From NCBI RefSeq assembly GCF_020745735.1, contig NC_083409.1, forward strand, positions 7,367,534 to 7,431,533: DNA of 64,000 bases, given 5' to 3'. The translations under genes and the position numbers were made by a program. This stretch comes from Hemiscyllium ocellatum (Eukaryota). Positions 4,350-63,325 of the stretch are shown piece after piece (the first letter of the stretch is position 1; the number at the start of each line of letters is the position of its first letter). A model generated the notes under the pieces. That model saw only the letters and a list, made by a program, of their open reading frames with translations. It had not been told where the DNA came from and made no database searches.

Positions 4350-4490
4350 TCAGAATCTCATTCCTGATGAAGGGCTTGTGCTCGAAACGTCGAATTTCCT
4401 GTTCCTTCGATGCTTCCTGACTTGCTGCGCTTTAACCAGCAACACATTTTCAGCTCTGATCTCCAGCATCTGCAGACCTCACTCTTTACA
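4350..4490 (+). mobile_element. Solitary Penelope-like terminal repeat fragment (family A)
   Basis: Matches the 3' end of the PLE at 31150-31250 (attcctgat.aagggc...gaaac.tcgaatttcctgttcct...gctttaaccagcaacacattttcagct). Confidence 0.8.
4360..4395 (+). ncRNA. Minimal type I hammerhead ribozyme motif, core intact
   Basis: attc-CTGATGA-a-gggc(ttgt)gctc-GAAAC-GTC-gaat: helix I attc/gaat, helix II, palindromic ACGT helix III, GUC cleavage triplet. Confidence 0.75.
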
Positions 4491-5950: not shown

Positions 5951-6837
5951 GTCACATTAACATTTACAGTTTTAACTGTTGTAAAGCTTTGACATTCAAA
6001 TTATAAGATTGGGATTACATCCCGAAACGTCTATACTTCTGCTTCTCACTTTGCTTCACTGAGACATGCCTTCAATATGAACTCTTCACCAAGGTGTTAT
6101 TTACTTGCTCCCTTTTTTTCCTAATATGTATTAAAATTAACGGTTCACAGAATTGGAATGGAAGGTATCTGGTGCAACAGCATTCCACTGCAGCATCTCA
6201 CTGAATGTCATTCTCCTAACGTTTTTCCTGTAGCACTGTGCATGCTTACTTTTCAAATAATTGTTAGTTTATTTTTCGAAAAATATCCATTGTTCATGGC
6301 TCCACCACACTCTTTGGCTGAAACGTTTTGCCTCTTAATACATTTGTTTTGTTTGTGATTTCCTTTACATCAGCGTTTTCTTATTCTTCATTCCTTCATG
6401 CATGGGAACATTTTATACTTAAATCCCGACTTCATATCTCTCGTGTTGGTAAATTAATACAGTATCAACGTTCGACGTTCGCTTGCAGCCTACTGCATAG
6501 ATAGGGTCGCCCCTTCTCCTTAACTGCCATCCAACTAGAATACACATGAAGAGGATATTTAGCTACGATTTTCACCATCTACATCGAGATGTTACCACGA
6601 GACACATATTAACGATAACCTCAATTTTTTAGCTTTCCTCAGGGTCAATCCATCCCGGATCCACACTCTGGTCTCGTGTTCATTCACACGAAACACCTCA
6701 GCAGAGCCTCACGAAACGTTTCCCTGAAACGTCATAGGTGGCATCAACTGTTGGTTTACGTCAGGCAACCACAGTATCGAATGGCCCAACTCACCTCACC
6801 GATGAGTTAGCACTTTCCCTGGACATCATACAATCTG

Positions 6838-7278
6838 GGTAAAAGCAATGATTGCAGATGCTGGAAACCAGATTCTGGATTCGTGGTGCTGGAAGAGTAC
6901 TGCAGTTCAGGGAGCATCTGAGGAGTAGTAAAATCGACGTTTCGGGCAAAAGCCCTTAATCAGGAATACAGGCAGAGTGCCTGAAGGGTGCAGAGATAAA
7001 TGAAAGGAGGGTGGGGTGGGGAGGGAGTAGCATAGAGTACAATAGGTGAGTGGGGGTTATGAAGGCGATAGGTTAGGGTGGAGGGTGGAGTGGATAGGTG
7101 GAATAGAAGATAGGCAGGTAGGACAAGTTATGGGGACAGTGCTGAACAGCTAGTTTGGAACTGGGGTGAGGTGGGGGAAGGGGGAATGAGGAAGCTGTTG
7201 ATGCCCTGGGGTCGAAGTGTTCCGAGGTGCGATATGAGGTTTTCTTCCTCCAGCCGTCGTGTGGTGAGGGAGACACTA
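6838..7278 (-). mobile_element. Penelope-like 3' fragment (family A)
   Basis: Resembles the reverse complement of 30900-31250. The hammerhead motif at 6932-6967 has a core mutation (CTGATTA). Confidence 0.75.
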
Positions 7279-10392: not shown

Positions 10393-10690
10393 GGGTGGCA
10401 CGGTGGCACAGTGGTTAGCACTGCTGCCTCACAGCACCAGAGACCCGGGTTCAATTCCCGCCTCAGACGACTGACTGTGTGGAGTTTGCACGTGGGTCCC
10501 CTGCGGGTGCTCCGGTTTCCTCCCACATTCCAAAGATGTGCGATTCAGGTGAATTGGCCATGCGAAATTGCCCGTAGTGTTAGGTGAGGGGTATATGTGG
10601 GGGTATTGGTGGGTTGTGCTTCGGCGGATCGGTGTGGACTTGTTGGGCCGAGGGGCCTGTTTCCACACTGTAAGTAATCTAATCTAATCT
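10393..10690 (+). mobile_element. HE1-type tRNA-derived SINE
   Basis: Pol III A-box TGGCACAGTGG (10404-10414), B-box GGTTCAATTCC (10448-10458), LINE-like 3' tail and (TAATC)n end. Small internal deletion relative to the copy at 28831-29133. Confidence 0.9.
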
Positions 10691-11376
10691 ATTCAGTACA
10701 CTAGTGGATTAATCTATATATTCGCACAAGCTCTCTATCGCAAATATTCGCAAATTACACGAGGTCAGCGAATTAAGTCTGAATCAGCTTTCCAAGCAGC
10801 ATCGGGTGCTGAACAGACAAAAACAGTGCAATGGTCTGTTAAAGAGTTTGAGATGCTGATTTTGGACAGGTTTAGACTATGTTAGAAATCAGGCCACAGC
10901 AGGTGATAATTCAACAGGCTAATTTGAAACCTCAATCTTTCGGAGCATTGCCACTTCATCACTTGGCTTCTGACCGAGCTCTATTAACCCAGAACACAAA
11001 TCTGCTAAGCAATGACACCATTATATTGATCCGTAAGCCTGACTCAGTTACCACTCCGCACTGCAGTGCAATGTTCTCCAAAGCCAGACTAGATATCTGC
11101 TAATCACGGAGAGTTGCACGGAGCACGTCAGTGTATTGATTTATCTGCCTCGAAGAACTATTTGTCCACCATGGTGACCTCCATAGATAAGAGCAGTGCA
11201 AAAATATATAAACCTGGTCGAGGAAAATGTTCAGCATTAGTAGCTATTGTTATACAGTTGAAGGCGTTTATTGGGCATTTAAGAGAGACTGAATTCTTTT
11301 CTAAACAGAGAGCTTCCAAGTACCTGTGTATACGACGAGATGGAAGTCACTGAGCGTATTGAAAAGTTTGAAATAC

Positions 11377-18958: not shown

Positions 18959-20440
18959 TAAAAATCACACAAACCAGGTTATAGTCCAACAGGTTTAATT
19001 AGAAGCACACTAGCTTACTAAAATTGTAAGGCACAGAATTTATAGCAAAAGTTTGCAGTGTGATGTAACTTAAATCATACATTGAAGAATACCTTGATTG
19101 TCTGTTGAGTCTTTCATCTGTTCGAATACCATGATATTTTCACTTCTTTCATGTGTAACTCACAAAACCGCTTTTAAAAGTTGCATTCTCAGGTTAACTG
19201 TAACAATTGGTGTTAGCTAGACAAAATGTTGAAGGTGCTAGCCCCCTGTGTTTTCTGTCTCTGCCAAGATGTGTAGACTGATTCTTATCTACGATGTGAG
19301 ATAACAGAGGTTTAAATGAATTCATACAGTTTCTGAGCAAAGTACAATGTAATTCTGCAAGTAGAAATTCACACCACAAACATATATGCATATGTATGCA
19401 TGTGGGTCTTTGTGTGTGTGTGTGCGTGTGTTTGTGTGTGCGTTTGTGTGTGTGTCTGTCTGGGTTGTGAGTGTGACACAGTGCATGTGTGTGTATGGAA
19501 GTGTCAAGTTCCTAAGTCTGTGAGGGAGTGTATGTGTGAGTGTGGGTGTGTGTGCGTGAGTGTAGAGTGATCTAAATCTGTGAGAGGATGCATGTGAGAG
19601 TGTGGGAGTGTGTGTGTCTGTAAGAGTGTATGTGAGTGTCTGTGTGCGTGTCTGTGTGTATGTGTGTGTATAGGAGTGCCTGTGCTTGTCTGTGTTTGTG
19701 TGAGTGTGCTTACGTAGTAGTGTTTGTGTGTGCGTGTATATAGTGCAATAGTGTTCACCATAATGTGACATGAATCCGAGGTCCCGGTTGAAGCCCTCCC
19801 GATGGTATGGAACTTAGCTATCAGCCTCTGCTCGGCTCACTTCTCTGCTAACTGACCCGAAGCCCGCCTTGGAGGATGGTCATCCGAAGGTCCGAGGTCG
19901 AATGTCCTGGACCGCTCAAGTGTTCCCCAGCTGGAAGGGAACACTCCTGTCTGTTGATTGCTGTGTGGTGCCAATTCATCCGTTGCTGTACCCTTTGCTC
20001 GATTTCCTCAATATACAATGCCTCAAGGAACCCTTGTCTGCAACGTATACGATGTACAATGATGGCTGAGTTACATGAGTACCAGCCATGTTCATGGTCT
20101 GGAGGTGTCTCCACGTGTAATGGTGTCTATGTCCACACTCTGACAAGCCTTGCAGCGCCGACAGTGACAGTGTTGTCTGGAGTTGTCCTGAAAGCCAGGC
20201 AGCTTGCTACCAACAATGATCTGTTTGAGGGTGGCGGTTGTTTAAAGGCAAGCGTTGGAAGTGTGGTGTCGGTCTTGGAGAGGTGCTCATCCTCATTGAT
20301 AATGTGTTGTAGGTCACGAAGAATATAGCGTAGTTTTTCAGCTCCTGGGCAGCAATTCGAATCTGTTGGACTACAAACTGATCGAACATCTGTGTGCACT
20401 GGGGATTGCGGGACTAGTTTGCTAAAATGTTCCATTTCAA
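18959..20440 (-). mobile_element. Penelope-like element 3' part (family C) with GIY-YIG endonuclease and internal (TG)n tract
   Basis: LAFKQPP and YSCNSAIIVHRIRCRQGFLEALYIEEIEQRVQQRMNWH (GIY-YIG-like). Terminal repeat taaaaatcacacaaaccaggttatagtccaacagg, with the hammerhead segment deleted near 19018. Confidence 0.85.
19390..19745. repeat. (TG)n-rich low-complexity tract within the PLE
   Basis: Directly visible; source of the spurious His/Thr-rich ORFs. Confidence 0.9.
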
Positions 20441-23178: not shown

Positions 23179-24199
23179 CCTTGGTTCAACTGTCCTCACT
23201 ATCTAACTTTCCAGGTTAATAAAAAAGACAATGCAGCCTTTCTCTTTCTCTCAAACACTCGAATCCCAGGAATCTTCTTGCAAATTTTCACTCACTCTCT
23301 TAAGGTTAACATCATTCTTTCTATCGAAGGTAAACCAAAATTGTAAGCAGTGTTCCAGCTGCATCATGACGTCCGACACTTGTCTTCAATGATACGACCA
23401 ATGAAGGCAAGTATATCTAACGCCTTGTTTACAATTCTGTAAATGAGTTTTCTGCTGTTGTCATTCAGGATTAATATGCTGCTCTATTACCAGTTGGAAT
23501 ATTCTACGTTATTTTTTGGGAATTCTTTTTTTACCCACTCAGTCCATTTCCCTCGTTTTTATGACGATGAAATTCTCAAGATTTTCATTCACTATAATTC
23601 ATTTTTCTCATCCAGAAACATGAAACCTGATTCTTCCTCCACATATACAGGAGTTGTTGCTTAATCTCGTTTGCCCGTGGGGTACGTGAGGTGTAATATT
23701 CTTGGGCTGCTGCAGTTCAGTTGATGAAAGGATTCCACAATGTGATCAGGTAAGGAGTTAAATATTACGTCAGCAGTTTTCATGAAGAGTCGACGCTATG
23801 CGTCGAAATAACGAATAAATTGTAGTATTATTACGTTTCTAATTTCACAATAATATTAACAATGAACTGTTGACATGAGAACACAGATGGTCAAACGCGT
23901 TTCCACATCAGATTTTCCCGAGTATCTTAAAGGTGGAAAAAAGACCTGACAGGTTTCTGGTAGGAAGTCCAAAACGTGTTTCGTTGGCAACAATTGAAAG
24001 AACCACCAATGTTGGAGCAGTGAATAAGCACATTGTGCAAATTAGAAAACGGATGTTCTCAAAGGTCGTGCGGTGCAAGGGGATGCAGATGGTCCCGAAC
24101 AGGAGGGAAGCCAAGAGCAAAGAAAAAATTACATCACTGTCTATAAATAGGAGTCTTCGTATGTCAGGGTGCAAAGGAGCCATGGTTGAATAAATCTTG

Positions 24200-25750
24200 T
24201 ATGCAGAGAACCCCTGGGCAGCAGTGTTTAGTTATCATTGAGATTGCAGGAACATTTAATCTGGGAGGTCAGCCAGGAGTATGTTTCGATACTGAAGTCT
24301 TCAGTTTTCACAGAAATGAATGAGAACTTCAACAGATGAATTGAGAAGAGGGTAGAGTTGGTTAATTTCTGTGAAGTGGAAATAAGCGATCTTGGTGCAA
24401 GTCTATTCAGTCATGCTCAGCTTACTTCTAGAATCTCGGTAATTTGTCAAATTCTGAGTCAAGTCTGTGATAATTTAAGGTGCTGAGTGGCCTTAATAGA
24501 AATTAAACTGGGCGTCTCTGTGAAGGTTACAGCTGAGTAGGTGCTGCTTTGAAATATTGTTGTAGGCTCCTTCCACCACTTTACTGATGACTGAGAGAAG
24601 ACTGTTAGGTGCTTCTTTTAAATCTTGTGTCCAGGACATACCGTAATCAATGATTCACAGTGTCGAATCGACGCCAGTGCTGCAGCGTGCTTGGAAGTGA
24701 TTGGCCTGATGAGACCAATTCTGGAGCATAGTTCTTCATTAATATTTCCAGAATGTTCTCATGTTCCATAGCATTTACCGCATACAGTAACTCCAACCAT
24801 TTTTTGATATCGCATGTAGTGAATCAAATTGGCTGAAAACTGGCCTGTACAAAAGTGGTGAACAGTAGAAACGTCGAGAGGCACCATCACTTGTATATTC
24901 CGGTTGAGGATTGTTGAAAATGTTTCAGTTTCAGCCTTTGCATGAATAACTTGGACACTTCCGTCAGTGAGGGTTGGGATATTTGTGAAGTCGCCTCTTC
25001 CTGTGAGTGGTTCAATTGATTATCGATAGTCACGGACTGTGTTTTGCAGAGTTGCAGTGCTTCAGAGCTTATTTATGACCTGTTGGTTGTGGGGTCATTT
25101 AGCTCTAGTTCTTGTTCCTCATGCATTCCGGTTTGGCAATTTGAGCAATTGAAACCTCACTTCTCGGTATGCGTGGACCTGCTTCAAGCATGCCCTCCTA
25201 TACTCGAATTGAACCAGAACTGATTTCCTGGTTCAATTGTAATAGTTAGTTGTGGGATATAACGAGACACGATGCTACAGATGCGCCAGAGTGCAATTCT
25301 ATTACAGATCTTCCACGTTGATTTATGGAGTTCCAGTCTTGTGTTTCTTGATATGTTCTTACTTAGAATGACGATCGCGCCTAACAACACGATGCAGTAT
25401 ACTCTCAAAGTGAAGGCGGCTTTTTGTCTCCAAAGGCACTGTGTAAATGGTCACTCTTAACGATATTCTCACAGACAGATGCGCCTGCAACTCTCAGATC
25501 ATTAAGTACGAAGTCAAGTATGTTTTCTTTCCTCTTTTTTTTGATTCCCTCACCACCTGCCACAAAAACAGTCCAGCAGCTCGGTCGTTTCTGATCCCAC
25601 TAACGTAATCAGGAGTACTGCTGCCTAGCCGCTCTGTGGTAGACGTAGAAACCTCCCGCTTACAGTACATATTGCGCAATTGCTTTCCTCAGTGCTTCCT
25701 CCAAGCCTTTTACAAATTGGAGGAGCACTGATACGTCAACTGAGAGAAGG
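24200..25750 (-). mobile_element. Older CR1/L2-like LINE fragment including endonuclease
   Basis: ERLGSST...WQVVRES.KR / ENILDFVL...VAGASV...KSDH correspond to the APE PTRGxNILDLVL and SDH motifs; colinear with 18040-18350. Confidence 0.7.
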
Positions 25751-25849
25751 CTATGCACGGAAATCAGTGGGAGGTTTCCTTGCCCATTGATAACCGGAAA
25801 CCATTAGTCTTCAAGGGAATCAAAGGCAAGGGTAAGAATTCCATAAGAT

Positions 25850-27720
25850 AATAACACCAGAAGACACAGGAGCAGAATTTAGGCCATTCAGACCATTGAG
25901 GCTGCTCCACCATTCATTGAACTTGATAAATTTCTCCACGCCATTCGTAAACTTTGGTCATCTCGGCAATGAAGAGTGAATCTCTCTTAGCCTTAAATAC
26001 TCAAACACCTGGCCACCACAGTCTTCTATGCAAATGAATTCCATAGATTCACCAGTCACTGCCTGATGACTCTCCTCGTTATCTCTTCTCCATTTACGCT
26101 AAGGTTCTGTTTTAGGTTCTTCGTCTCTCCTACCATGGAAACATCTTTCAAATATCCAATCTGTCCAGGCCATTCAATATTCTGTAAGTTTCTGTTAGAT
26201 ACCCACTCATCTTTGAAAGCTCCTTCGAGTATAGTTCCAGAGTCCATAAACACTCCTCATGAGTTGAGCATTTTATTCCTGGGGCCATACCCGTGAACTG
26301 ACTGTGATCATTCTCCAGGGTCAGTACGTCGACCCTGAGATATGGCAATCAAAACTGCGCACAAAATTCCAAATTTTTTCTGACCAGAGCCTCATCGAGC
26401 CTCAGACGTACATCACTGATTTTATATTCAAATGCAATCATTGCATTTGTCATCCCAACTATTGAATTTATCTGCATAATTAACTTAATTACTTGAAAAA
26501 CAAACTGACGAAAAAATGTAACTTGACAAAGAGCTGTTCCAATTTGCTGCAATAGCCTTGGTTAAAAGGTAAATATAAACACAGAGGTTCTTACAGGGGA
26601 GGAATTTCAGACAGTGAGTCCGCTGGAAAATGTTGAATTGGGGAACCTTTCTCACCAGCACCTTTCTTTATCCAAGAGCATCCAACCGACTGTTTGTCAA
26701 AAACAGCAAACTGGAAGAACTGGCCACTCTCCTTTTACTGGACAAATGTTTACTATAAAACCGAAAAGCCTTTTCCCTGACTGCTGCCTTCGGCATTATC
26801 TGTTATCCATGAGCAAAGTCCCTAACCCAGACAAATTGGAACCTCGGCCTTTACAACCCCTCTTGAAAAAAATCCAAGGACCACTTAAACTTGTGAAATG
26901 AGCAGCATTGTCACACCACTGTGAAAGCTGATTTAAAGCACCGATGCACTTCTTCCACCATTTCTTTGTCCCCCATTACTATTTCTGCCTTTTCCAGTGG
27001 TACAATTTGTATTATTGACTCCCTCTTGCCTTTCACATATCTAAAGAAAAACTCTTGCAATACCCTTTTATTTTACGAGCTCAAATACCCCTATATTTTA
27101 GTTACTCTCTGCTCTTTTTTTAAAGTCTTCCCAATCCTCCGGCTTCACAATAATCTTCACCACATTGCATGTTTTTTCTTTTGCTTTTATGCTCACCCTG
27201 ACTTCCCTCATCAGCCATGGTTGCCTTGGCCTCCACTCAGTCCCTTTCTTCTTCCTTGGATTGAATTCCTGCTCTGCCTCCCAAATTACTTCCAGAAGCT
27301 CCTGCCATTGCTGCTCCATTCTCTCTTATGCTCAGCTTCCATTCTTATCAACTCTGGCCAGCTCCTCCTTCATGTCTTTATAGTTCCCTTAAGTTAATTG
27401 CATTACCAGTACAACTGACTCCAGATTCTCTGTCACAAACTGTAGGGTGAATTCTGTCATATTACGGTGAATGTTCCCAAGGGATTCCTTCACCCGAAGT
27501 TCCCTAATCAGGACTGCTTCAATACACATCATCCAATCCAGAATTGCCTGTTCCATAGTGATCCCTACCACAAGCTGCTCCTAAAACCATCTCGTAGACA
27601 TTTCATTAATACCTTCCCTTGACATCCCCAAACAACTTAATTTTCCAGTCTACCTGCATATTAAAGTCCCTCATGACTATTGTAACAGAGCCTTCTCTAT
27701 TACCTGTTTTATTTTCTTCC
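25850..27720 (-). mobile_element. CR1 LINE fragments (3' end and ORF2 middle)
   Basis: LTETYRILNGLDRLD; EQAILDWMMCIE..LIRELRVKESLG; PRQPWLMREVRVSIKAKEK. Confidence 0.7.
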
Positions 27721-28054
27721 TCATATCCTGACTACTGCTGGCGGGGTCCTGTGCTAAGTTCTCATCATGCTCTTTGAATCCCATCTTCTGTGCCTTTCAT
27801 TTTCTCACATTCTGTGCAACTGAACCCATTTGCTTTCTCTTTGAGTTGACTTCAGGTCAATATTTATACCTGAAACATCACTGAACATGCTTCATAATCT
27901 CATTTACTATTGTGCAATGTTGTTGTGTACAAATTGTGTTTTCTGCATGACAGCAGTAACCAGTGTCCAGTCAAGTCCCTCACTCTCTGTAAATGCTTAG
28001 GGAGAGCCTGACATAAAAGTCTTTCTTTTGATGCACTGCGAGCCTTTCAGATAG

Positions 28055-28155
28055 CAGAGATTTCCTGATGAAGGGCTCTGGCCCGAAACGTAGAATTTTC
28101 TGTTCCTAGGATGCTTCCTAACCTGCTGTGCTTTAACCAGCAACACATTTTCAGA
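28055..28155 (+). mobile_element. Solitary Penelope-like terminal fragment (family A)
   Basis: Same sequence as 4350-4490 and 31150-31250. Confidence 0.8.
28061..28096 (+). ncRNA. Minimal type I hammerhead ribozyme motif, core intact (GUA triplet)
   Basis: ttc-CTGATGA-a-gggc(tctg)gccc-GAAAC-GTA-gaa. Confidence 0.7.
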
Positions 28156-28830
28156 GCAGATATCAGAGATGCCATTCCATTTATTAGACAGACAACAGGA
28201 CGGTTTCTCCTGGTGTCCTGGTCAATATTGATTCCCTAATTAGCATCACTAAAAATCTGATCCTCGCCTCATTGTCACCCAGCTCTCTGGCATCTTGCTG
28301 AGCACAGTCTGATGGAAAGAGCCACTGCGGCATCTTTAGGTGGAGGCAGGTGCAACATAAATGCAAGTAATTCTTTGAGGTTGGAGTCTCCTGAACCTGA
28401 CCCTTGCCCATTGGATGCACGCTTCCATCTTCCAGGGAACATGGGATCATTTAGAGCCGTGACACTGTCTGATCCCGGGACACTGAGACTCTTTGCAGCC
28501 TCACATTTGACCTTACCCAGTGTTGAGCTGGAAGATTTGAAACAACATCTAGAACCTTCTCCATGGATACCCAACGTGAATCGTTCCTGAAGTGTGGATC
28601 CGGCTCTGCTCCAATGTTGTTGGATAAAGTTCTCCCGAGCTGTGTGTGATCGAAGGTTTGTTAAAGAGTTGAGGAACTCCACCCCAAATACCAGGTCTTG
28701 CTCCATAGCTCTGGAGGCTTTGGTGTTTCAAGTGAATATCCAAGTGTTTTTTCAATGTGATGAGGGTTTCTGCCGCTCTCACCCTTTCAGACAGTGAGGC
28801 CCCGATCCCACCAGCCACAGGGTGAAGACA

Positions 28831-29133
28831 ATTAGATTACTTACAGTGTGGAAACAGGCCCTTCGGCCCAACAAGTCCACACCGAGCCGCCGAAGCGCAA
28901 CCCACCCATACCCCTACCCCTACATATACCCCTTACCTAACACTATGGGCAATTTAGCATGGCCAATTCACCTGACCCGCACATCTTTGGAAACCGGAGC
29001 ACCCGGAGGAAACCCACGCAGACACGGGGAGAACGTGCAAACTCCACACAGTCAGTCGCCTGAGGTGGTAATTGAACCCAGGTCCCTGGCGCTGTGAGGC
29101 AGCAGTGCTAACCACTGTGCCACCGTGCCGCCC
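28831..29133 (-). mobile_element. HE1-type SINE, near full length
   Basis: Reverse complement of the 10393 copy; it ends about 75 bp upstream of the Ig constant-exon splice acceptor. Confidence 0.92.
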
Positions 29134-29209
29134 ACCTGATGAATTGATTGAATCGGTCAGATTACTCATGGATACAAATGTTCAAAGGTTTGTTTCTCTT
29201 GTCTTTCAG

Positions 29210-29537
29210 GCCGTGACAACTCTCAGCCCAAGCTGTCCCTGCTGCCCCCCTCACTGGAGCAGGTCAATGCCAAGGGCACTGCCACCCTGGTGTGCCTTGC
29301 CAATCACTTCTATCCCGATGAGCTGGAGGTGCAGTGGAAGAAGAACGGTGCACTCATTTCGGACGGGGTTCAGACTAGCAACTACCTGCGAGCTTCGGAC
29401 AGCATCTATAGTGTCAGCAGCCTGCTGACCCTCTCTGGGTCTGACTGGGAGTCCAAAACTCACTTCCCCTGTGCCCTCACCCGTGTGACCCTCCCTCTTC
29501 CCTCAGCAAGAGCAACAGGAAATCAGAATGTGTGTAG
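29210..29537 (+). pseudogene. IGKC: Immunoglobulin light-chain kappa-type (shark type III/NS4-like) constant exon with a 1-nt frameshift near the 3' end
   Basis: Acceptor tttctcttgtctttcag| at 29208-29209 (phase 1). It encodes RDNSQPKLSLLPPSLEQVNAKGTATLVCLANHFYPDELEVQWKKNGALISDGVQTSNYLRASDSIYSVSSLLTLSGSDWESKTHFPCALTRVTL, a C1-set domain with both Cys and the Trp. The expected end LSKSNRKSECV* (TAG 29535-29537) lies in a shifted frame. Confidence 0.92.
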
Positions 29538-29639
29538 AGTGTTGGAGACAATCCACAGAGGAGATACAACTTTAAATAGAACAGGACTGAGGTGGCAGGA
29601 CAAAGGTCATTGTCAGCGCAGAATTTCAACTCTCTTCAC

Positions 29640-31250
29640 CTCTTCCGCTTCTTCCTTTCCCGCCGCACCAACCAGTTCACTTCCACTGACACCCTCCTTC
29701 GACTTACTGAACTGGTCCTCACCCTGAATAACTTCTCTTTCCAATCCTCCCACTTCCTCCAAACTAAAGGAGTCGCCATGGGCACCCGCATGGGCCCCAG
29801 CTATGCCTGTCTCTTCGTAGGATATGTGGAACAGTCCATCTTCCGAAACTACACTGGCACCACCCCCCACCTTTTCCTCCGCTACATCGATGACTGTGTC
29901 GGCGCTGCCTCGTGCTCCCACGAGGAGGTTGAACAGTTCATCAACTTTACCAACACCTTCCATCTCGACCTCAAATTCACCTGGACTGTCTCAGACTCCT
30001 CCCTCCCCTTCCTAGACCTTTCCATTTCTATCTCGGGCGACCGACTTAACACAGACATCTACTATAAACCAACTGACTCCCACAGCTACCTGGACTACAC
30101 CTCCTCCCACCCTGCCCCCTGTAAAAACGCCATCCCATATTCCCAATTCCTTCGTCTCCACTGCATCTGCTCCCAGGAGGACCAGTTCCAATACCGTACA
30201 GCCCAGATGGCCTCCTTCTTCAAGGACTGCAGATTCCCCCCATACATGATCGATGATGCCCTCCACCGCATCTCCTCCACTTCCCGCTCCTCCGCCCTTG
30301 AGCCCCGCCCCTCCAACTGCCACCAACACAGAACCCCACTGGTTCTCACCTGCCACCCCACCAACCTCCGTATACAGCGTATCATCCGCCGACATTTCCG
30401 CCACCTCCAAACGGACTCTACCACCAGGGATATATTTCCCTCCCCTCCCCTATCAGCGTTCCACAAAGACCAGTCCCTTCGTGACTCCCTCGTCAGGTCC
30501 ACACCCCCCACGAACCCAACCTCCACTCCCGGCACCTTCCCCTGCAACCGCAGGAAATGCAAAACTTGCGCCCACACCTCCTCCCTTACTTCTCTCCAAG
30601 GCCCCAAAGGATCCTTCCATATCCGCCACAAATTCACCTGCACCTCCACACACATCATCTATTGCATCCGCTGCACCCGATGTGGCCTCCTCTATATTGG
30701 GGAGACGGGCCGCCAACTTGCAGAACGCTTCAGGGAACACCTCTGGGACGCCTAGACCAACCAACCCAAAAACCCCATGGCTCAAGACTTTAACTCTCCC
30801 TCCCACTCCACCGAGAACATGCAGGTCCTTGGACTCCTCCATCTCCAGAACATAACAAAACGACGGTTGGAGGAAAAGCGCCTCATCTTCTGCCTGGGAA
30901 CCCTCCAACCACAAGGGATGAACTCAGATTTCTCCAGTTTCCTCATTTCCCCACCCCCCACCTTGTCTCAGTCGATTCCCTCGAACTCAGCACCACCCTC
31001 CTAACCTGCAATCTTGTTCCTGACCTCGCCGCCCCCACCCCACTCCGGCCTATCACCCTCACCTTGACCTCCTTCCACCTAAGACATCTCCGTCGCCCCT
31101 CCCCCAAGTCCCTCCTCCCTACCTTTTATCTTAGCCTGCCTGGCACACTCTCCTCATTCCTGATCAAGGGCTTTGGCCCGAAACATCGAATTTCCTGTTC
31201 CTTGGATGATGTCTGACCTGCTGTGCTTTAACCAGCAACACATTTTCAGC
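29640..31250 (+). mobile_element. 5'-truncated Penelope-like element (family A): RT C-terminal half + GIY-YIG + terminal repeat
   Basis: ORF 29592-30755 has KGVAMGTRMGPSYA, LRYIDD and IIYCIRCTRCGLLYIGETGR. A single TAG (30753-30755) is followed by the same frame to TAA at 31004. The terminal repeat carries a mutated hammerhead at 31156-31191. Confidence 0.93.
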
Positions 31251-31518
31251 TTGGTAAGTCCTTGCCAACTTTCACTCTTTAAACGGTACAGTACACGCCT
31301 ATGCATTCATAATAATGAACATATTTTATTCTTAAAATTTATTTCCGTAGTTTTAAACACCCTAGAAAGAGAAAATATGTATCCAGCATCTATTTTTTCA
31401 CAAAATCGTGTATGGCTCAAAACGATTTCGCATCCAATACTTGAACTGAGAGTGTTTCGTATCAAACAGCCTCCCAGGAACATGTGCACAGGGAGGAGGA
31501 ACATCATGTCTTGGGCAC

Positions 31519-31645
31519 ATTCCTGATGAAAGCCTTCTGCCCGAAAGATTTACTTTCCTGCTCCTCGGATGCTGCATGACCTGCGGTGCTTTTCCATTGC
31601 ACCATTTTTCGACTCTGACCACCTGCATCTGCAGTCTCGCAGTCC
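31519..31645 (+). mobile_element. Diverged PLE terminal fragment
   Basis: ctgatgaaagccttctgcccgaaa...ctcggatgctgc.tgacctgc.gtgcttttcc. Confidence 0.7.
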
Positions 31646-32334
31646 AGATGCAGTAAAGCATTGCTACGATTAAACCCGACACTCTTTCCCAGAAACAACA
31701 TCATTTGAAACCACTTGCTACATCTGCAGAATAACGTCATGGATCGGAGCAGCAGTTGGTTATTCAGCTGCACCATTTAGAATGCTCATGGCTGATCCAA
31801 ATGTGTCTGTCCATCCGTCTCCAGTTTGTTCCCAGTAAACACTGACTCTTCTGTCCAGCAAAGATCACTCGAGCTCAGCCTTGAACATTTTCAATAACTG
31901 CGTCTTTACTTCTCCCTAAGGTCAAGGCCACCACAGGTAGCACAACACTAAAGGGAAAAGGACATCCTTATTTCATGCAAGACCCGTTAGTTTAAAACTG
32001 TGCTAACCTAACATCAAATTGCCAATTCTTTTGATACGTAAGGACAGAATAATTAGGTATAGACATAAACAATATAGCCCTCTAAACCTGACCAACATTG
32101 CCAGTGAATCTTTGCAATCAAGTATGTATTAAACTAATTCTCCGCTCTTGTCACAGGAAGAGAACACCACATGAGCATTTTAAAAAGGATTAGAATTAGG
32201 CCATTCGGGCAATCGAGTCTGATTACCATTTAATAATGGCTTAGAGGTTTGTCAACATCATTCTCCTTATTTCTCTCTGTAACTCTTGGTACCCAAATTC
32301 ATCAAAATCCCGTCTATCTCTGGCTTTTAGCCAC

Positions 32335-32600
32335 AAGTGCCTATGTTTCTGTGTGTCTGTGTGCGTGTGTGTATTTGTTCATGCGTTTTTGTGTGTCTGT
32401 GTATTTGTTTGTATACATTTGTCCTTCCGTGTATTAGCCTCTGCATTTTATCTGTGTTTACGTCTGTTTGTGTGTGGCTGTGTATGTCTCTGTATGCCTC
32501 GACATGAGTGTGGGCCCATCTCAATGAATGTGCTGTGAGTGTTAGTATATTGAGGTGTTCACGTATGTCTCTAAACATTTCTGTGTCTGCATCCTTCTGC
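32335..32600. repeat. (TG)n-rich low-complexity tract
   Basis: Directly visible. Confidence 0.8.
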
Positions 32601-34049
32601 AATGAGATATTTGGTGTTTTGGGAGGAAAAGGAGTAGTGGAACAGAAAGAGCATTTAAAGTGAGTACTGCCCTCCAGAGAACATTGTTCCTTACTCAGTA
32701 GGACGTGGATATTACGGAATCTCCATATGATTCACTCAGTCCTCTCTGGCTCGTGCCAGGGTTCTCCCAAACTGGCGGGGAGAGTGGAGAAAGGGAACGG
32801 ATACCGAGCACTCCAACACCCGGCTTGACCCTTTCAGTCCTGTTCCAGGCTGTTTCTCCTGGAATGGGAGTAAGGGAAGGGACAGGGGGTGGGGTGGTGG
32901 TGGAATGAGCTGTTCGTACTGTTATAGGTGATGGTCGTGGCGGGGAGGGTTGCTGAATGGTGAGGTGTCAGGTGGGAGTCAGTCCATAGTGCAGAATACA
33001 TAAGGTGTTATTTGTGTGGGGGTATTGCATAGGCGACGGACAAAATGATGGAGGAAGGTCCTGAATTCAATAGTGATAGTGGTCGTGCATGAATTTTATC
33101 TGGAGACAAAGCGTGAGCTTTGTTCGGTGGTAGGTGCTATAACAGCTATTCAGTAAGTGTGTCGGTGCAGAGAGAATACGATGACACTTATCCTGGCAGA
33201 AGTAGGATGCAGAATGTCCTGTATTGCTGGATATTTCTTCAGATCATCTCAGCATCGAGGTGCGCCTCAAGGAACGTCTTGTCTAAGTCTGTCACTATTA
33301 ATCAACCGACCCTGTCCCTCAGATCCCACAGAATTAGTTTGGGAGGATCTTAAAAACGAGAAACAAACATGAGTGTGTTCTGCCCTGCAAAACTGTCGAG
33401 CAAATTTTGTACATCTTATGCTCTGGAAATTAGATATTGTGGTTGCTGCAGTAATACTGAATTATCTCAAGTTATGTCTAAACCTCGTTAAATAAGTGAC
33501 TGCTAATGCTATGAAAAATAAATTCTAACAGTGTTATCAGGTAACTTGAAGAGTTGTTGTTATCCAAACTAGAGAGCAGGTTTGTATGGATTTGGTAATG
33601 TGTGCTCAGAAGGACTAATTAAGGAGCTTGTTCTGAAGAATAGTGACATTAATATGTTGCATTTTACACGGCATCTGCACATAAGAGCGAATGTTGAACA
33701 TGATGTTTAAACATCATGGAAGCCTGGAGGCTAAAGGGGCAAGTTCGCTCCAGTGAATTAAGAAAGCGAGAAATAATAAGAAGCAAATCAATCACTTGAA
33801 GGAGACTGACTAACATAGGGATATGGACACCTGCTGGCAGCAAGATCAGGAATACTCTCCAGATATTCTACAAGTGTGTCAGCTGGAATAGAATAACTAG
33901 GGAACAGTTAGGACTTATTAGAGACGTGCCACGTTGCATCCAAATCAACTTTGGGTTAGCATAGAGAGCATGGTGGTAGAGGGCTGTTTGTGTGACTGGA
34001 GACTGGTGTCCAATGATGTACCACCGGATCAGTGCTGTGATCCACATTA

Positions 34050-34190
34050 CACTAGATTATAGGTCAACAGGTTTATTTGGAGGCATTAGCTATCGAAGCG
34101 CATCATCACCTGACGAAGAAGCAACGCATCGAAAGCTAGTGCCTCTGAATAAATCTGGTGGACTATAACCTAGTGCCATGCGATTTTTTA
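34050..34190. mobile_element. Inverted pair of PLE family C termini (palindromic mini-element)
   Basis: The left arm ttataggtcaacaggtttatttggaggcattagctatcg is a diverged reverse complement of the right arm cgaaagctagtgcctctgaataaatctggtggactataa. The right arm holds cac-CTGACGA...GAAAG-CTA-gtg. Confidence 0.75.
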
Positions 34191-35520
34191 AAATTAAAAA
34201 CGATTGGCCCAGTGTTTAGACGTGATATGTAACTTACAGTAAGGCGTAAATGGAGTAGTCAGATGGGCAGATCAATGGCAGATGGATTGTCAACTTGATA
34301 AAGGTGATGTAATGCACTTTGGAGGGAGGAATCAGACAGGGTAGTACTCGATGAATGGCAGCACACTAGGAAGCTCAGCAGGTGCTGCTCCACATATCCT
34401 TGAATGGGATGGACAGGGTAACACACAAATTGACAAAGTATAGCGACCGTAAACATCGCCTTTATTCATCAAGGTATACATTATAAGAGCTATGCAGAAC
34501 TTTAGTTAATCCAAGATGGAATAATGTGTGTAGTTTTGGGATCCACATTACAGGAAGGAATATGATTGTTCTGGAGGGAATGCAGAGGAGATTCACAAGG
34601 ATGTTCCCTTGGATGGAGCATATCAGAGATGGAGAGAGGCTGGATACGCTCGGGTTGTTTACTTTGGAGCAGAGAAGGCGGAGGGGATTGTGATTCAGAA
34701 GGATAAAATTACGAGGGACATGGACAGGGTGGACAGACAACAGCTGTGCCTTTTATTGAAAGGGTCAAGAACAGGAAAGCACACTTTTAAAGTGAAGGGT
34801 TTGAGGTTTAGTGAGAATTTGATGATTGTTTTTCTTAACTCAGCAGGTGTTGGGGCTGGTATGCACATCCTGAGAGGGGATTTGTCACGGGTAACCTCAC
34901 AACCGTAAAAGAAAATACATTGTCGTGCACTTGAAATGCTATAACGTTCCCAGCTACGGATCTTGTGTCAGAAAGTGGGACTAATGTCGACAGTGCTGTA
35001 TTTGTGACGGTACAGAGTCTATGCTCTGTCATTGTATGGCTCTGGAGTGTCAGTCATTCAGCAGCTTAAGACAGGAATTGATGCGTTTCTGAAGAGTACG
35101 TTAACGAGGCTTTTAAAAGTGCAATTATAATAGTATCTATAAGCATGTCAGTAGCAAAATAAAGGGAAAAATGTGCAGCTTCTGACAGGCTGCAACCAGA
35201 GAATTGAGGACAGTGAAATGGCAGAACTATGAAGCAAATATTTCTTTTATGTCTTCACAGAAGAAATCAAATCAAAAAACATTCTTCCTGGCAATATTAG
35301 GAAACTTTAGTCTGGTGAAAAAGAAAGGAAATAGAATGATATTAGCAACTAAACAGTTTTAGAGAAATTACTGCGACCGAAAGTAATGGGCATAGACAAA
35401 GTCAACACAGATTTATGAAAAGAGAATCATATTTGAGAAACTGACCGTGCAAAACTATGGAGAAGCAATCAATGTAATACGAATGGATTTTTAGGAAAGT
35501 AGTTGATAAAGGCCCAACTA

Positions 35521-35649
35521 GGAGAAAGTCAGGACTGCAGATGCTGGAGACCAGAGTTGAAAAATGTGATGCTGGAAAAATACAGCCGGCCGTGCAGCAT
35601 CCGAGAAGCAGGAAAATCGACGTTTCGGATATAAGCCCTTCTTCAGGAT
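35521..35649 (-). mobile_element. PLE terminal fragment with hammerhead motif (35616-35649)
   Basis: Minus strand atc-CTGAAGA-a-gggc(ttat)atcc-GAAAC-GTC-gat. Confidence 0.75.
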
Positions 35650-38089
35650 AAAGGTCCAAGTCGACCATGCAAATTTAAAACTTATGGGACTGGGATATAT
35701 ATGTGAACATAGTTTAGAACGCGACACAGCACACAGAAAGTTGGAGTAGAACAATGTGTTTTCGAGTGGAAGGCTTACGAGTATAGCAGGAATTGGGGAT
35801 TGTGCCCCAGCTGTTCCTAATAAACACCAAACTTTTGGCGAAAGGCAGAAAATGTGTTATTCCCAAATCTGCTGATGGCATGAAACGATGTCGAATTGTG
35901 AGTCGGTGTGCAGGATGTAAAAAAAAAAGCTCCAAGGTGACTGAGACAAATGGAGTGAATGGGCAAATACGTGGCAGATAGGAAGCAATGGGGGTAGGTG
36001 TTACTTTGTGCCCTTTGGTGGGAAAAACAGAACGGCAACCTTCCATTTGAAAAGGGATTGGTTGAAAAAGTATTGATTTGCAAATGAACTTATGCTGCAT
36101 TTTTGTTTCTTTCTGCGCATACCTCCAAGGTCCATGCAGGAGAGTGAGTTCTGAAGTCAGAATTCAATACTGGGAATGGCATTGACACGCTGACCAGTGT
36201 ACACAAAACCATTGAAGTGGGGAGCTATAACATTGAAAAGGATCTGGATCTCCCTGTACACCAGTCACTGAAAGTAATATTGTAGCATTAGAATGCAGTT
36301 AGGAAGATAAATATTGTGTTGACCTCCATTTTAGGGGGATTTGAGTCCAGAAGCAAGGGTGTCTTACTGCAGTTGTACTAGGGCTTCGTGAGACCTCAAC
36401 TAGAACATTGTGCAGGATTGTGTGCAGTTTTGGTCTCCTTACCTCATAAAGGAGAAGCCTGACATTGAGGGAGTGCAGCGGAGGATGACCAGATCTCTGG
36501 GATGACAGGCTTGTAAGAAGAGAGTGAGGATCGACTGGGCCTGTATTCCATGGGCTTTAGGAAAATGATTGGAAGCCTCAGTGAAATATAAAAAACTCTG
36601 ACAGGGTGAGTCCGATTGGAAGCAGGGATCATAATTCCCCTGGATCGGACGACTAAAACAAGGGGCCACAATATTAGGTACAGACAGGCCACTCTGCATT
36701 GAGATAAGAATGAATTCCAGCACTGGAGAATGTGCGGAATTTTCTGATACATAAGGCTGTGGAAGTCAAGACATTGAGAATGAGTAAGGAGTTCAAGACA
36801 GAGAGCAAGGCAATGCTATGGAGATGGGTGATCAACCATCATTACAAGTAGTTCTCCAATAATGCAGTTGATTTGCTTATGTGCAACAGCGTGTCATAGA
36901 TAGAAAATGGTGCAACATAAATAATGGGGGCGATGAAGAAAAGAGGATAAGGGGCGAACCCTAAAATATCAGTGAAAACCAAATATGAAAGGTGGTCTAA
37001 CACAAACACACTCGCACAGTCTAAGTTAATCTTTAAGACATTTTCACAATGAAATAATACATTAAATGCAACATTTTGACACTTTAACAAATGTAACAGT
37101 CACTGACTACAGCCCTGTACCTTTCACGATGCTCTTCACCAGACGTTTTCGGAGCTCACTGACCACGTGATGCTAATGTGAATTCCCAGTACTTCCCAAA
37201 GTTCTCCTCCAGGTCGAGCTGATGTTCATTCGAAATGTAATCTACAATTTCGAGTTTGACGCATAGTTTCGAGGCTTGCAGAGCGGATTACATCCCTGTT
37301 TAAGCTGACCACACTGAGTGCGCATTTTTTCAAATAGAAAACCCTGAGCTTGGATTTGGTGTTCAGCCGATGTCGGGGATGGAATTGCCTAACAGTGAAC
37401 AGAAACTTGCTTGATTGAAAAATCACACACAATTCAAAAACGGCATTGCAGCCAATTTGCATTAATTCAACACGTGTCATCGCAGAACTGTCTGTGTATT
37501 GAATGGAGGAGCAAAATTGATGGATAGCAGGGACGACAGTTGTTCTCATTACATATTTCACAATGATTAAGAGTATTAAGGGATATGAACACTGTGAGGA
37601 AAACTACATTGTGGAGATTTTATCCATGACCTAGAATGGGGAAGATTCAATGTGTTAATTGGCCTAATCCTTTCCCGATGTTTCTGTGCAGTCTGCTGGA
37701 AACCTCTGTTAATGTTATCACAAACTCTCAGATGTTAGGAAGGACGTCTCTGTAGTGTCGATGGGACTATATTTCCCGTTCCCTTTTCGGAAAATGAGGC
37801 TGGTGCCGAGTGTTCTGTCCAGTTTTACCCTTTAAGACCCTGGTTCTGTTTGATATATTTGAGTGATTTTCTTGGCCGTTTCAGAGTCCATTGCAGAGGT
37901 TGTCACATGCCTGTGTATCTGGAATCACTTTTAGGCCAGACCAGGAAAGAACAGAAGATTTGCTTCTGAAAAGTACTTTGGGGAAAGAAACACATGTTTA
38001 CAATCGACATTGTCTTTAGGGTCACTATTACTGACACCAGATTTGAGATCTTGATATTTCATTAATTGATTTCAACTTCCACCAGCTGC

Positions 38090-61764: not shown

Positions 61765-63325
61765 CTCTCTGATTCCATGTGTGTTTGTATGTCCAAGTAT
61801 GTATCTGCATATTTCTGACCACACTTGTCGATTTCGCTGTGTGTGTGTATATGTACATGTGTGTATTTATCTCTTTGTGTGTTCCTGCATTAGTGTGTGT
61901 ATGCATGTTTGTATCTCCATCTCTGCATTTGTGTGCAATGGGAGCTATTTTGTTTTGGGGTAAATCATTGAATGGGGTTCAAGGCCTCCCTTCCTCCCTT
62001 TCCCTCTCCCTTTGTCTCTCTCCCTTTTGCTGAAAATGATACAATTCCATGCTCTTCTGCTGTGTTTTAGGACTTTTCAATTCTTTCTGACTGGTAAGGG
62101 TAAGTCACATTTTACAGGAGTGTGTGCGTGTGCGTCAATGTGTGTGTGCCTCTGTGCCTGTGCAAATGTGTTTGTATGCTGTGAGTGTACAGCTGTGTGT
62201 ATGTATGAGCGTCTGTGTGTGCATGTCTTTATCTGTGTGTTAATGTGCTCCTTTATTGTGTGTGTGTGTGTGTGTGCGTGCAGGTTTGTCTGTGTACGTT
62301 CATGCATGTGCATGTGTGTGGGTAATGTGTGTGTCTGTATATGGGGGCATTGTGAGTATCTGTTCGTCTGTCTGTACGTATGCATGCCTGTGTGTTGGTT
62401 TGGGTGGGTGTGTCGGCATGTATGGTGTATGTCAATGCATGTGTACATCTGCATGTGTGACTGCGTGTTTATGCCTGTCTGTCGGTCTAACTGTGTCCCT
62501 GTGTGCATATGTGTGTGGGTATATACGAATGTTATTTGTGAGGGTGTCTGTGTGAGTGGGTGGGGATTATGAATATCTTCATGGGTGGGAAATGTGGCTG
62601 TTTGTGTGCGGGTGTGTCGGCATGTGTGTGTGTGTCTCTGTCTGTGTGTGCGATTCTGTGTCTGTGTGTGCGTGTGTGGATCTGTGTTGAAGTAGTGTTT
62701 TGCTGAAAAAGCACAACTGTTCGGGCAACATTCAAGGAGAAGGAGGGTCGAAATGTCGAGCATAATCTCTTCATTACAAATGAGGCTGTGGGCAATGATG
62801 GCTGTGGGATAAATGGGAGAGGGTGGTGCTGGGGGGAAGATTGTTGTGAGGCGAATGTTAAATGAAGATGGGGTGAATGTGATAAGTCGGCGTCGAGGTT
62901 GGAATGGATGGATGGGAACGAAGCTGGAAAGGTAGTACATTTCAAGAAAGAGGTGCCGAGTTTGAGGGTGGGATCTGGAATAAGGTTGGGAGGGAGAGGA
63001 AATGAGGAAAGGGGTAGAATCTTTGGCTGTGAATGGTGCGTGCGTGTGTGTGTGCGCGCATTTGTATGTGTCATTTGGAGTGTGTACGTCTCTCGGGTGT
63101 CTGTGCATCTGTGTCTCTCTGCATTTGGTTGTGTATGCGTGTGTGTGTGTCTTTGTGGGATTCTGTGAGAGTGTGTGCCTGTGTGCAGCTGTATGTGTGT
63201 CTGTTCCGGTGAGCATGTATGTGTGCATGTGTGCGAGTCTGTGTGCGTGTGTCTGTGTCTGATTCTGTGCGTGTGTGTGTCTGCGTCTGCGTGTGTCTCT
63301 TCCTGTGTGTGCGTGTGTGTGGGGG
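61765..63325. repeat. Long (TG)n-rich low-complexity region
   Basis: Directly visible; produces the spurious 383-aa His/Thr ORF. Confidence 0.9.
62690..63025 (-). mobile_element. Old PLE 3' fragment embedded in the TG tract
   Basis: Minus strand tttcctcatttcc...ctcaaactcggcacc resembles 30940-30995 and ends with a decayed terminal repeat (gtgctttttcagc). Confidence 0.55.

What the first reader, a model, noticed from the sequence alone, without database searches (positions are those of the whole stretch)
29210..29727. Ig kappa constant exon whose frameshift removes the C-terminal Cys and reads into UTR/Penelope sequence
Seen: the C1 domain is intact, then accctccctcttccctcagc is one base short. 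Adding one C to either C-run restores LSKSNRKSECV*. As written, the frame runs on for about 70 extra residues to the stop ending at 29727, the last part read from PLE DNA. Known: the near-terminal Cys of Ig light chains forms the inter-chain disulfide. Inference: this is a pseudogene, a light chain unable to bond covalently to heavy chain, or an assembly indel in a homopolymer.
Basis: partly seen in the sequence, partly recalled or inferred. Interest (0 to 1): 0.72.

Follow-up and report, generated by a model that had tools for sequence, protein, structure and literature searches.

The report
Dead orphan shark kappa constant exon
This is a stranded, broken copy of a shark antibody light-chain constant exon: it has a real one-base deletion, no V or J segment, and a tail cut off by a mobile element, so it is an ordinary pseudogene.

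Summary
Window 29210-29537 (+) is a shark kappa (type III/NS4) light-chain constant exon. It is up to 89% identical in protein to bamboo-shark and epaulette-shark kappa chains. Against two Chiloscyllium punctatum genomic copies it has exactly one 1-bp gap, in the C-run 29493-29495 (CCC here, CCCC or CTCC there). That gap puts ...LSKSNRKSECV* out of frame, and the frame runs on to the stop at 29725-29727.

The deletion is probably not an assembly slip. A 124-nt read-derived contig from a public DNA run matches 29427-29550 with no mismatch and no gap, at about single-copy depth. Intact-frame paralogues sit in the same run at roughly 65-fold higher depth.

The frameshift is not the only defect:
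- The 64-kb window holds no V, J or RSS.
- Kappa homology ends 100 nt after the old stop, where a 5'-truncated Penelope-like element begins. The poly(A) signal, about 0.5 kb downstream in relatives, is missing.
- A SINE sits 73 nt upstream of the splice acceptor.
- Six residues that are invariant in 12 other shark kappa C domains are changed.

The pseudogene reading is supported. The "non-covalent light chain" reading is not. Other first-stage notes list several more orphan kappa C exons on other DNA of this genome. Interest is low.

The parts
27404..27589 (+). Possible remnant of the J-C intron (weak evidence)
   Evidence: It resembles the N-terminal 'exon' of predicted protein P0030, whose C-terminal half is a kappa C exon (tblastn E 2e-8, with stops). 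It was found nowhere else in the window, L001 or L002.
27828..28014 (+). Possible remnant of the J-C intron
   Evidence: nhmmer E 3e-11 to L002:13601-13797, which lies 300-500 nt upstream of that cluster's C exon. The order is co-linear with the C exon.
28062..28154 (+). Solitary Penelope-like-element terminus with a CTGATGA...GAAAC core
   Evidence: Direct repeat family D2, 89% identical to 31157-31249. Similar copies occur elsewhere in the window and in L001.
28831..29136 (+). SINE inserted 73 nt upstream of the splice acceptor
   Evidence: 78-83% identical to copies in L001, L002 and window 10398-10687. Read-contig depth runs in the millions.
29137..29209 (+). Last 73 nt of the J-C intron, with polypyrimidine tract and AG acceptor
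   Evidence: 29190-29211 is 22/22 identical to L001 intron/exon. Paralogue contigs depart from the window upstream of 29190. Alignment A2.
29210..29537 (+). Kappa (type III/NS4) constant exon, phase 1, broken by a 1-bp deletion
   Evidence: Pfam C1-set E 2e-19. Up to 89% amino-acid identity to C. punctatum and H. ocellatum kappa chains. 90.9% DNA identity to L001:28449-28897 over window 29190-29637.
29493..29495 (+). C-run one base shorter than in relatives; the frameshift at codon 95
   Evidence: The only gap in alignment A2. X1 record 5 matches 29427-29550 exactly at depth 13.9. Paralogue contigs carry 'C put in behind 29492' at depth 904.5, 703 and 198.
29529..29537 (+). Ancestral Cys-Val-stop, now out of frame
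   Evidence: Frame-3 translation ...KSECV*. Homologues end ...SECV or ...SECA.
29538..29637 (+). First 100 nt of the 3' UTR; the remaining ~430 nt and the poly(A) signal are absent
   Evidence: 90/100 identical to L001. In L001 and L002 the UTR runs on to a shared GGAATAAA about 525 nt after the stop. The distal UTR was found nowhere in the window. No AATAAA or ATTAAA occurs before 31669.
29638..31249 (+). 5'-truncated Penelope-like retroelement in the same orientation as the exon
   Evidence: ORF 29592-30755 gives weak Pfam RVT_1 and GIY-YIG hits. 688 relatives carry RVT_1, PF26215 or GIY-YIG domains, the best being C. punctatum at 76-79%. Homology starts at residue ~227-358 of ~660-residue relatives. 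Terminus at 31157-31249.
29725..29727 (+). Stop codon of the shifted frame, inside PLE DNA

Best explanation
This is a dead, orphaned constant exon of a shark kappa (NS4/type III) light-chain mini-cluster. It sits in a TE-rich stretch of the chromosome that carries the multicopy kappa array. It descends from a normal V-J-C cluster. What survives is part of the J-C intron, the C exon and 100 nt of the 3' UTR. The V and J segments, which carry the only known promoter, are gone. A SINE has landed 73 nt upstream of the acceptor. A 5'-truncated Penelope-like element replaces the rest of the UTR, including the poly(A) signal. Free of selection, the exon then collected a 1-bp deletion in a C-run (CCCC to CCC at 29493-29495) and several replacements at otherwise invariant residues. 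The deletion throws the inter-chain Cys and the stop out of frame. Shown here: the anatomy, the deletion, the absence of V/J/poly(A), and read support for the deletion. Inferred: the order of events and the lack of expression.
For: Kappa identity and frameshift. No V, J or RSS anywhere in the 64 kb, by motif scan, tblastn with 33 light chains and blastn with C. punctatum V-J DNA. Normal clusters put V-J 3.5-13 kb upstream of C. Kappa homology runs only from about 29137/29190 to 29637, and the distal UTR and its poly(A) signal are missing. PLE identity and 5' truncation. The deletion is real: X1 record 5, a 124-nt contig with 0 mismatches and 0 gaps over 29427-29550 at depth 13.9, next to intact-frame paralogue contigs at depth ~900. 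Relaxed constraint: six private changes at sites invariant in 12 other shark kappa C domains (T9S, D45N, T65I, A83T, S86P, H91R), against 0-4 in any other sequence. The window lineage has 8 replacement and 4 silent changes. The exon (90.7%) is no better conserved than the UTR (90%) against L001. Same-organism paralogue contigs carry the consensus bases at 29236, 29255, 29405, 29457 and 29458. Literature: shark L-chain genes are V-J-C clusters, promoters are found only at V, and a C-terminal Cys links CL to CH1 (PMC5192425). About 50 NS4 genes including pseudogenes were described in nurse shark (PMC2193156).
Against: No RNA run of the likely source organism was found, so silence is inferred and not shown. 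A V-J more than 29 kb upstream, outside the window, cannot be excluded. Read support rests on one contig of one run, whose relation to the assembly's own sample is unknown. Pairwise dN/dS (0.4-0.6) does not separate this copy from the others. The exon has no in-frame stop before the shift, and its splice acceptor is perfect.
Confidence: 0.85

Rival explanations
1. The missing C is an assembly or polishing error in a short homopolymer, and the exon's reading frame is really intact.
For: The site is a C-run, and adding one base restores a tail that fits all homologues. High-depth contigs with the extra C exist in the same runs, though they carry other mismatches and look like paralogues.
Against: A read-derived 124-nt contig reproduces the 3-C sequence with no mismatch at about single-copy depth. 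A 3- versus 4-base run is too short to be a typical homopolymer error (my own knowledge of sequencing error patterns). Even with the frame restored, the exon would still lack V, J and the poly(A) region, and would still carry six changes at invariant residues.
Confidence: 0.07
2. The kappa piece did not decay in place. It was carried here as a chimera with the Penelope-like element, for example by template switching from PLE RNA to unspliced kappa pre-mRNA during reverse transcription, or by TE-associated rearrangement. It is still a dead copy.
For: The kappa 3' UTR breaks exactly where a 5'-truncated PLE in the same orientation begins. The rest of the UTR does not resume after the PLE anywhere in the window, which a simple insertion would leave behind. 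Other first-stage notes list several other orphan kappa C exons in this genome (unchecked).
Against: Co-linear intron-like remnants lie 1.2-1.8 kb upstream, at 27404-27589 and 27828-28014, which suggests a larger piece of a resident cluster. By earlier notes, kappa genes lie 1.6 Mb before and 1.9 Mb after the window on the same chromosome, so decay in place is the simpler account. No target-site duplication was identified.
Confidence: 0.1
3. The exon is expressed and yields a light-chain constant domain with a new 76-residue tail and no inter-chain cysteine, pairing non-covalently with heavy chain.
For: The acceptor site and C1-set core (Cys28, Trp42, Cys87) are intact, and the shifted frame stays open for 76 codons.
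Against: There is no V, J, RSS or V promoter within 29 kb upstream or 34 kb downstream. There is no poly(A) signal until 31669. The tail has no domain match. Hallmark residues such as His91 and Ser86 are replaced. No RNA holder was found.
Confidence: 0.02

Closest known systems
Shark kappa (NS4 / type III) light-chain V-J-C clusters, e.g. C. punctatum and H. ocellatum 'immunoglobulin kappa light chain-like' and nurse shark NS4
   Same: The C exon is up to 89% identical in protein and 84-91% in DNA, over a stretch that also takes in the adjoining intron tail and the first 100 nt of the 3' UTR. The phase-1 acceptor is the same, and so is the tail once the frame is shifted back.
   Different: No V or J segment and no distal UTR or poly(A) signal. 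There is a 1-bp deletion before the C-terminal Cys, and six changes at otherwise invariant residues.
NS4 pseudogenes described in nurse shark (Lee et al. 2000, PMC2193156: R6, R19, S5, S15, S32)
   Same: Dead members of the same multicopy family, disabled by point defects.
   Different: Where the paper gives details (S5, S15), the defects are stop codons and faulty splice or recombination signals in V-J-bearing genes. This copy is a lone C exon with TE-truncated flanks.
C. punctatum locus L001 (BEZZ01001156.1, protein P0012)
   Same: The closest DNA available (90.9% over 449 nt). Its C exon also shows hallmark replacements (Y34C, Y66N, W79S), and its V-J lies an unusual 13 kb upstream.
   Different: L001 keeps the reading frame, the full 3' UTR with its poly(A) signal, and a V and J on the same contig.
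Penelope-like retroelements (reverse transcriptase followed by GIY-YIG endonuclease)
   Same: The element abutting the exon encodes RT then GIY-YIG in one frame. It ends in a repeat with a hammerhead-like CTGATGA...GAAAC core.
   Different: This copy is 5'-truncated, lacking roughly the first 225-357 residues of the ORF. No Rfam hammerhead reached the gathering score.

Membership tests
Ig light-chain kappa (shark type III/NS4) constant exon | C1-set Ig domain with the intradomain Cys pair and the conserved Trp | tested here: met
   Pfam PF07654 E 2e-19 against a cutoff of 21 bits. Cys28, Trp42 and Cys87 are all present in alignment A1.
Ig light-chain kappa (shark type III/NS4) constant exon | Closest relatives are kappa/NS4 chains and not lambda, sigma or heavy chains | tested here: met
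   The listed hits whose source names them by chain type are mostly kappa or NS4, at 73-89% identity. A few unnamed, contaminant or lambda-1-like entries rank lower.
Ig light-chain kappa (shark type III/NS4) constant exon | In-frame C-terminal ...SEC(V/A) with the inter-chain cysteine, then a stop | tested here: not met
   A 1-bp deletion at 29493-29495 puts ...KSECV* in another frame.
Functional shark light-chain cluster (V-J-C) | V (or fused VJ) and J with RSS within a few to ~13 kb upstream of C | tested here: not met
   None on either strand of the 64-kb window. Reference clusters L001 and L002 have them.
Functional shark light-chain cluster (V-J-C) | Complete 3' UTR with a poly(A) signal | tested here: not met
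   Homology stops at 29637. The GGAATAAA shared by L001 and L002 about 525 nt after the stop has no counterpart here.
Functional shark light-chain cluster (V-J-C) | Transcribed and spliced J-to-C in lymphoid tissue | not testable with these tools
Penelope-like element | Reverse transcriptase followed by a GIY-YIG endonuclease in one ORF | tested here: met
   Weak direct Pfam hits in the right order (RVT_1 19 bits, GIY-YIG 21 bits). Strong homology (E to 1e-186) to proteins carrying PF00078, PF26215 or PF01541.
Penelope-like element | Terminal repeats with a hammerhead ribozyme motif | tested here: inconclusive
   A CTGATGA...GAAAC core was seen in the repeats at 28062, 31157 and 31520. No Rfam family reached the gathering score in 24000-36000.

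The most novel reading that the evidence does not exclude
The exon is still used. A distant or trans-spliced V-J, or a sterile transcript, splices onto 29210 and yields a kappa constant domain with a new tail and no inter-chain cysteine. That would be a naturally non-covalent or decoy light chain.
Probability: 0.02. Interest if true: 0.55.

Novelty: new member of a known kind. Interest (0 to 1): 0.1.

Why it matters
It matters little on its own. It is one more decayed member of a large shark light-chain gene family in which pseudogenes have been known since 2000. Its practical value is for annotation: this exon should be flagged as a pseudogene fragment, and the frameshift should not be 'corrected' as an assembly error. 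If a census showed that the many orphan kappa C exons noted in this genome share breakpoints with mobile elements, that would say something about how cluster-type antibody loci shed and scatter parts. This single copy does not show that.

Tried and rejected
- **Closest homologue DNA.** Fetching genomic DNA for the closest functional homologues (P0001, P0003, P0004, P0005, P0007) failed because the files or gene ranges were too large. P0030 is not on record. Only two older C. punctatum contigs (L001, L002) could therefore be compared at DNA level.
- **RNA evidence.** No run on record as RNA holds the stretch. All runs of organism A look like whole-genome DNA.
- **dN/dS.** Pairwise values of 0.41-0.61 did not discriminate between copies. 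The lineage-polarised count of 8 replacement to 4 silent changes is small.
- **Inversion idea.** Window 28655-28830 matches, inverted, a segment upstream of V in both L001 and L002. I rejected an inversion because no inverted V follows, and because the segment looked to me like a diverged interspersed repeat (my impression; no repeat library was searched).
- **3' control element.** A 96-nt block 96% identical between L001 and L002 downstream of C looked like a control element. It is a palindromic interspersed repeat with several copies in the window.
- **Other checks.** Rfam found nothing in 24000-36000. Eight other long ORFs in the window have no Pfam match. The SINE appeared to extend to 29182 in nhmmer, but the multiple alignment shows the copies diverging after 29136.

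Full report
**Observation.** After the acceptor tttgtttctcttgtctttcag at 29209, frame 1 from 29212 reads RDNSQPKLSLLPPSLEQVNAKGTATLVCLANHFYPDELEVQWKK...SDWESKTHFPCALTRVTLPLP. It then runs on for 76 more residues to the stop at 29725-29727. The frame starting at 29472 reads ...PSSLSKSNRKSECV* with TAG at 29535-29537. Pfam gives C1-set at E 2e-19. Among solved structures, the best matching domain stretches are light-chain constant domains.

**Identity.** The closest proteins are 'immunoglobulin kappa light chain-like' of Chiloscyllium punctatum and Hemiscyllium ocellatum (up to 89%) and the nurse shark NS4 chain (84%). Catshark, horn shark, basking shark and dogfish kappa chains follow. All of them end ...CALTH(V/E/K)(T/S)L(P/S)(S/C)(P/A)(L/I)SKS(I/V)(R/S)R(S/A)EC(V/A). 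Kappa is the current name for shark type III/NS4 (PMC5192425). The source is therefore an orectolobiform-like shark.

**The frameshift.** Two C. punctatum genomic copies could be fetched, L001 and L002. Window 29190-29637 aligns to them at 90.9% and 83.7% over 449 columns. The multiple alignment has exactly one gap in the shared region. The window reads GACCCTC-CCTCT where L001 has GACCCTCCCCTCT and L002 has GACCCTCTCCTCT. The run 29493-29495 is one base short, at codon 95. That is 13 codons before the inter-chain Cys.

**Is the deletion real?** Four runs of one coded organism (A) were laid on 29100-29720.
- Their contig sets total about 4 Gb each and give the SINE million-fold depth, so I read them as whole-genome DNA.
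- X1 record 5 is a 124-nt contig at depth 13.9. It covers 29427-29550 with no mismatch and no gap, and bridges the site by more than 31 nt on each side.
- In the same and sister runs, contigs with 'C put in behind 29492' have depth 904.5, 703 and 198. One contig has 'T put in behind 29493' (the L002 type).
- The intact-frame versions are therefore collapsed paralogues at roughly 65 times single-copy depth, and the 3-C version exists in reads at about single-copy depth.
- No run holds more than 0.42 of the stretch's sampled words. X1 may thus be another individual or a close relative rather than the assembly's own sample; I cannot tell which.
- Either way, an assembly homopolymer slip is unlikely. 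I put it at about 7%.

**Surroundings.**
- Motif scans found no light-chain V or J motif, and the exact RSS pattern (CACAGTG, 10-25 nt spacer, ACAAAAACC) had no match.
- tblastn with all 33 light-chain hits and blastn with the V-J DNA of L001 and L002 found no V or J on either strand of the 64 kb.
- In the references, V-J lies 3.5 kb (L002, germline-joined) or 13 kb (L001) upstream of C.
- Downstream, the homologues' 3' UTR runs about 525 nt to a shared GGAATAAA.
- In the window, homology stops at 29637. The distal UTR occurs nowhere in the window, and the next AATAAA/ATTAAA is at 31669.
- From 29638-29644 the DNA belongs to a highly repeated family, shown by a depth jump and loose ends at 29644.
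- Its ORF (29592-30755) is related at up to E 1e-186 to animal proteins carrying RVT_1, PF26215 or GIY-YIG domains. Homology starts about residue 227-358 of ~660-residue relatives. This is a 5'-truncated Penelope-like element in the exon's orientation, ending near the terminus repeat at 31157-31249.
- Upstream, a SINE occupies 28831-29136. Only 73 nt of intron remain next to the exon.
- Further upstream, 27828-28014 resembles the L002 J-C intron (E 3e-11). 27404-27589 resembles the upstream 'exon' of a gene model that ends in a kappa C exon. Both are co-linear with the exon, so a larger piece of the intron probably survives between TE insertions.
- Eight other long ORFs in the window have no Pfam match.

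**Constraint.**
- At columns where all the other sequences agree, the window has six private replacements: T9S, D45N, T65I, A83T, S86P and H91R. The other 12 sequences have 0-4 each.
- With L002 as outgroup, the window lineage has 8 replacement and 4 silent changes. That is close to the neutral 3:1 of sites.
- The exon (90.7%) is no better conserved than the UTR (90%) against L001.
- High-depth contigs of organism A carry the consensus bases at 29236, 29255, 29405, 29457 and 29458. These changes are therefore private to this copy and not a species feature.
- Pairwise dN/dS (0.41-0.61) was not informative.

**Mechanism.** Shark light-chain genes are autonomous V-J-C clusters. Promoters appear to be associated only with the V segments, and a C-terminal cysteine of CL bonds to CH1 (PMC5192425). 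An exon with no V-J, no poly(A) region and a shifted tail cannot yield a light chain. The best account (0.85) is a cluster remnant that lost V-J and its distal UTR through TE-associated insertion and deletion, then drifted and picked up the 1-bp deletion. The order of events is inferred.

A variant account (0.1) is that the piece travelled as a chimera with the PLE. The UTR breaks exactly at the 5'-truncated PLE and does not resume after it. The co-linear intron remnants argue against this. So does the window's position inside the chromosome's kappa region, which earlier notes place 1.6 Mb before and 1.9-16.5 Mb beyond the window (unchecked).

**Comparison and novelty.** About 50 NS4 genes, several of them pseudogenes, were described in nurse shark in 2000 (PMC2193156). 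Other first-stage notes list at least six further orphan kappa C exons in this genome on other DNA. This is a new, unremarkable member of a known kind.

The Penelope-like element was only described.

Noticed in passing
proteins P0013 and P0025: Entries labelled Aeromonas veronii (507-bp contig) and Salmonella enterica (990-bp contig) are shark kappa light chains, 78% and 69% identical to this C domain. They look like vertebrate contamination in bacterial assemblies.
   Followed up: no
L001:28471-28797 (C. punctatum BEZZ01001156.1): This annotated C exon (protein P0012) carries Y34C, Y66N and W79S at hallmark positions, and its V and J lie 13 kb upstream. It is probably another dead copy annotated as a protein.
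   Followed up: partly
L002:10133-10576 (C. punctatum BEZZ01000502.1): V and J are contiguous in genomic DNA (...DYYCMQDYSVPQTLSFGKGTKLQL). This is a germline-joined kappa gene, a phenomenon known from nurse shark since 2000.
   Followed up: partly
window 28062-28154, 31157-31249, 31520-31612 (+); also 4360-4483, 6832-6966, 35519-35648: A repeated ~93-nt Penelope-like-element terminus with a CTGATGA...GAAAC hammerhead-like core. No Rfam family reached the gathering score in 24000-36000.
   Followed up: partly
window 28655-28830 (-) versus L001:13862-14039 and L002:9167-9320: A ~175-nt segment that sits 0.4-0.8 kb upstream of V in both C. punctatum clusters occurs once in the window. There it is inverted and lies directly upstream of the SINE next to the C exon. 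It looks like a diverged interspersed repeat, but no other copy was seen in the 127 kb examined.
   Followed up: partly
window 18959-19016, 34043-34188, 10866-10961; L001:33884-34078; L002:17101-17196: A palindromic ~95-nt interspersed repeat (…CACCAGGTTATAGTCCAACAGGTTTAATTGGAAGCAC…) is 96% identical between the two C. punctatum loci downstream of C. It could be mistaken for a conserved control element.
   Followed up: partly
window 62077-63228 (-): The second-longest ORF in the window (383 aa) has no Pfam match. It may be an unclassified TE protein.
   Followed up: no
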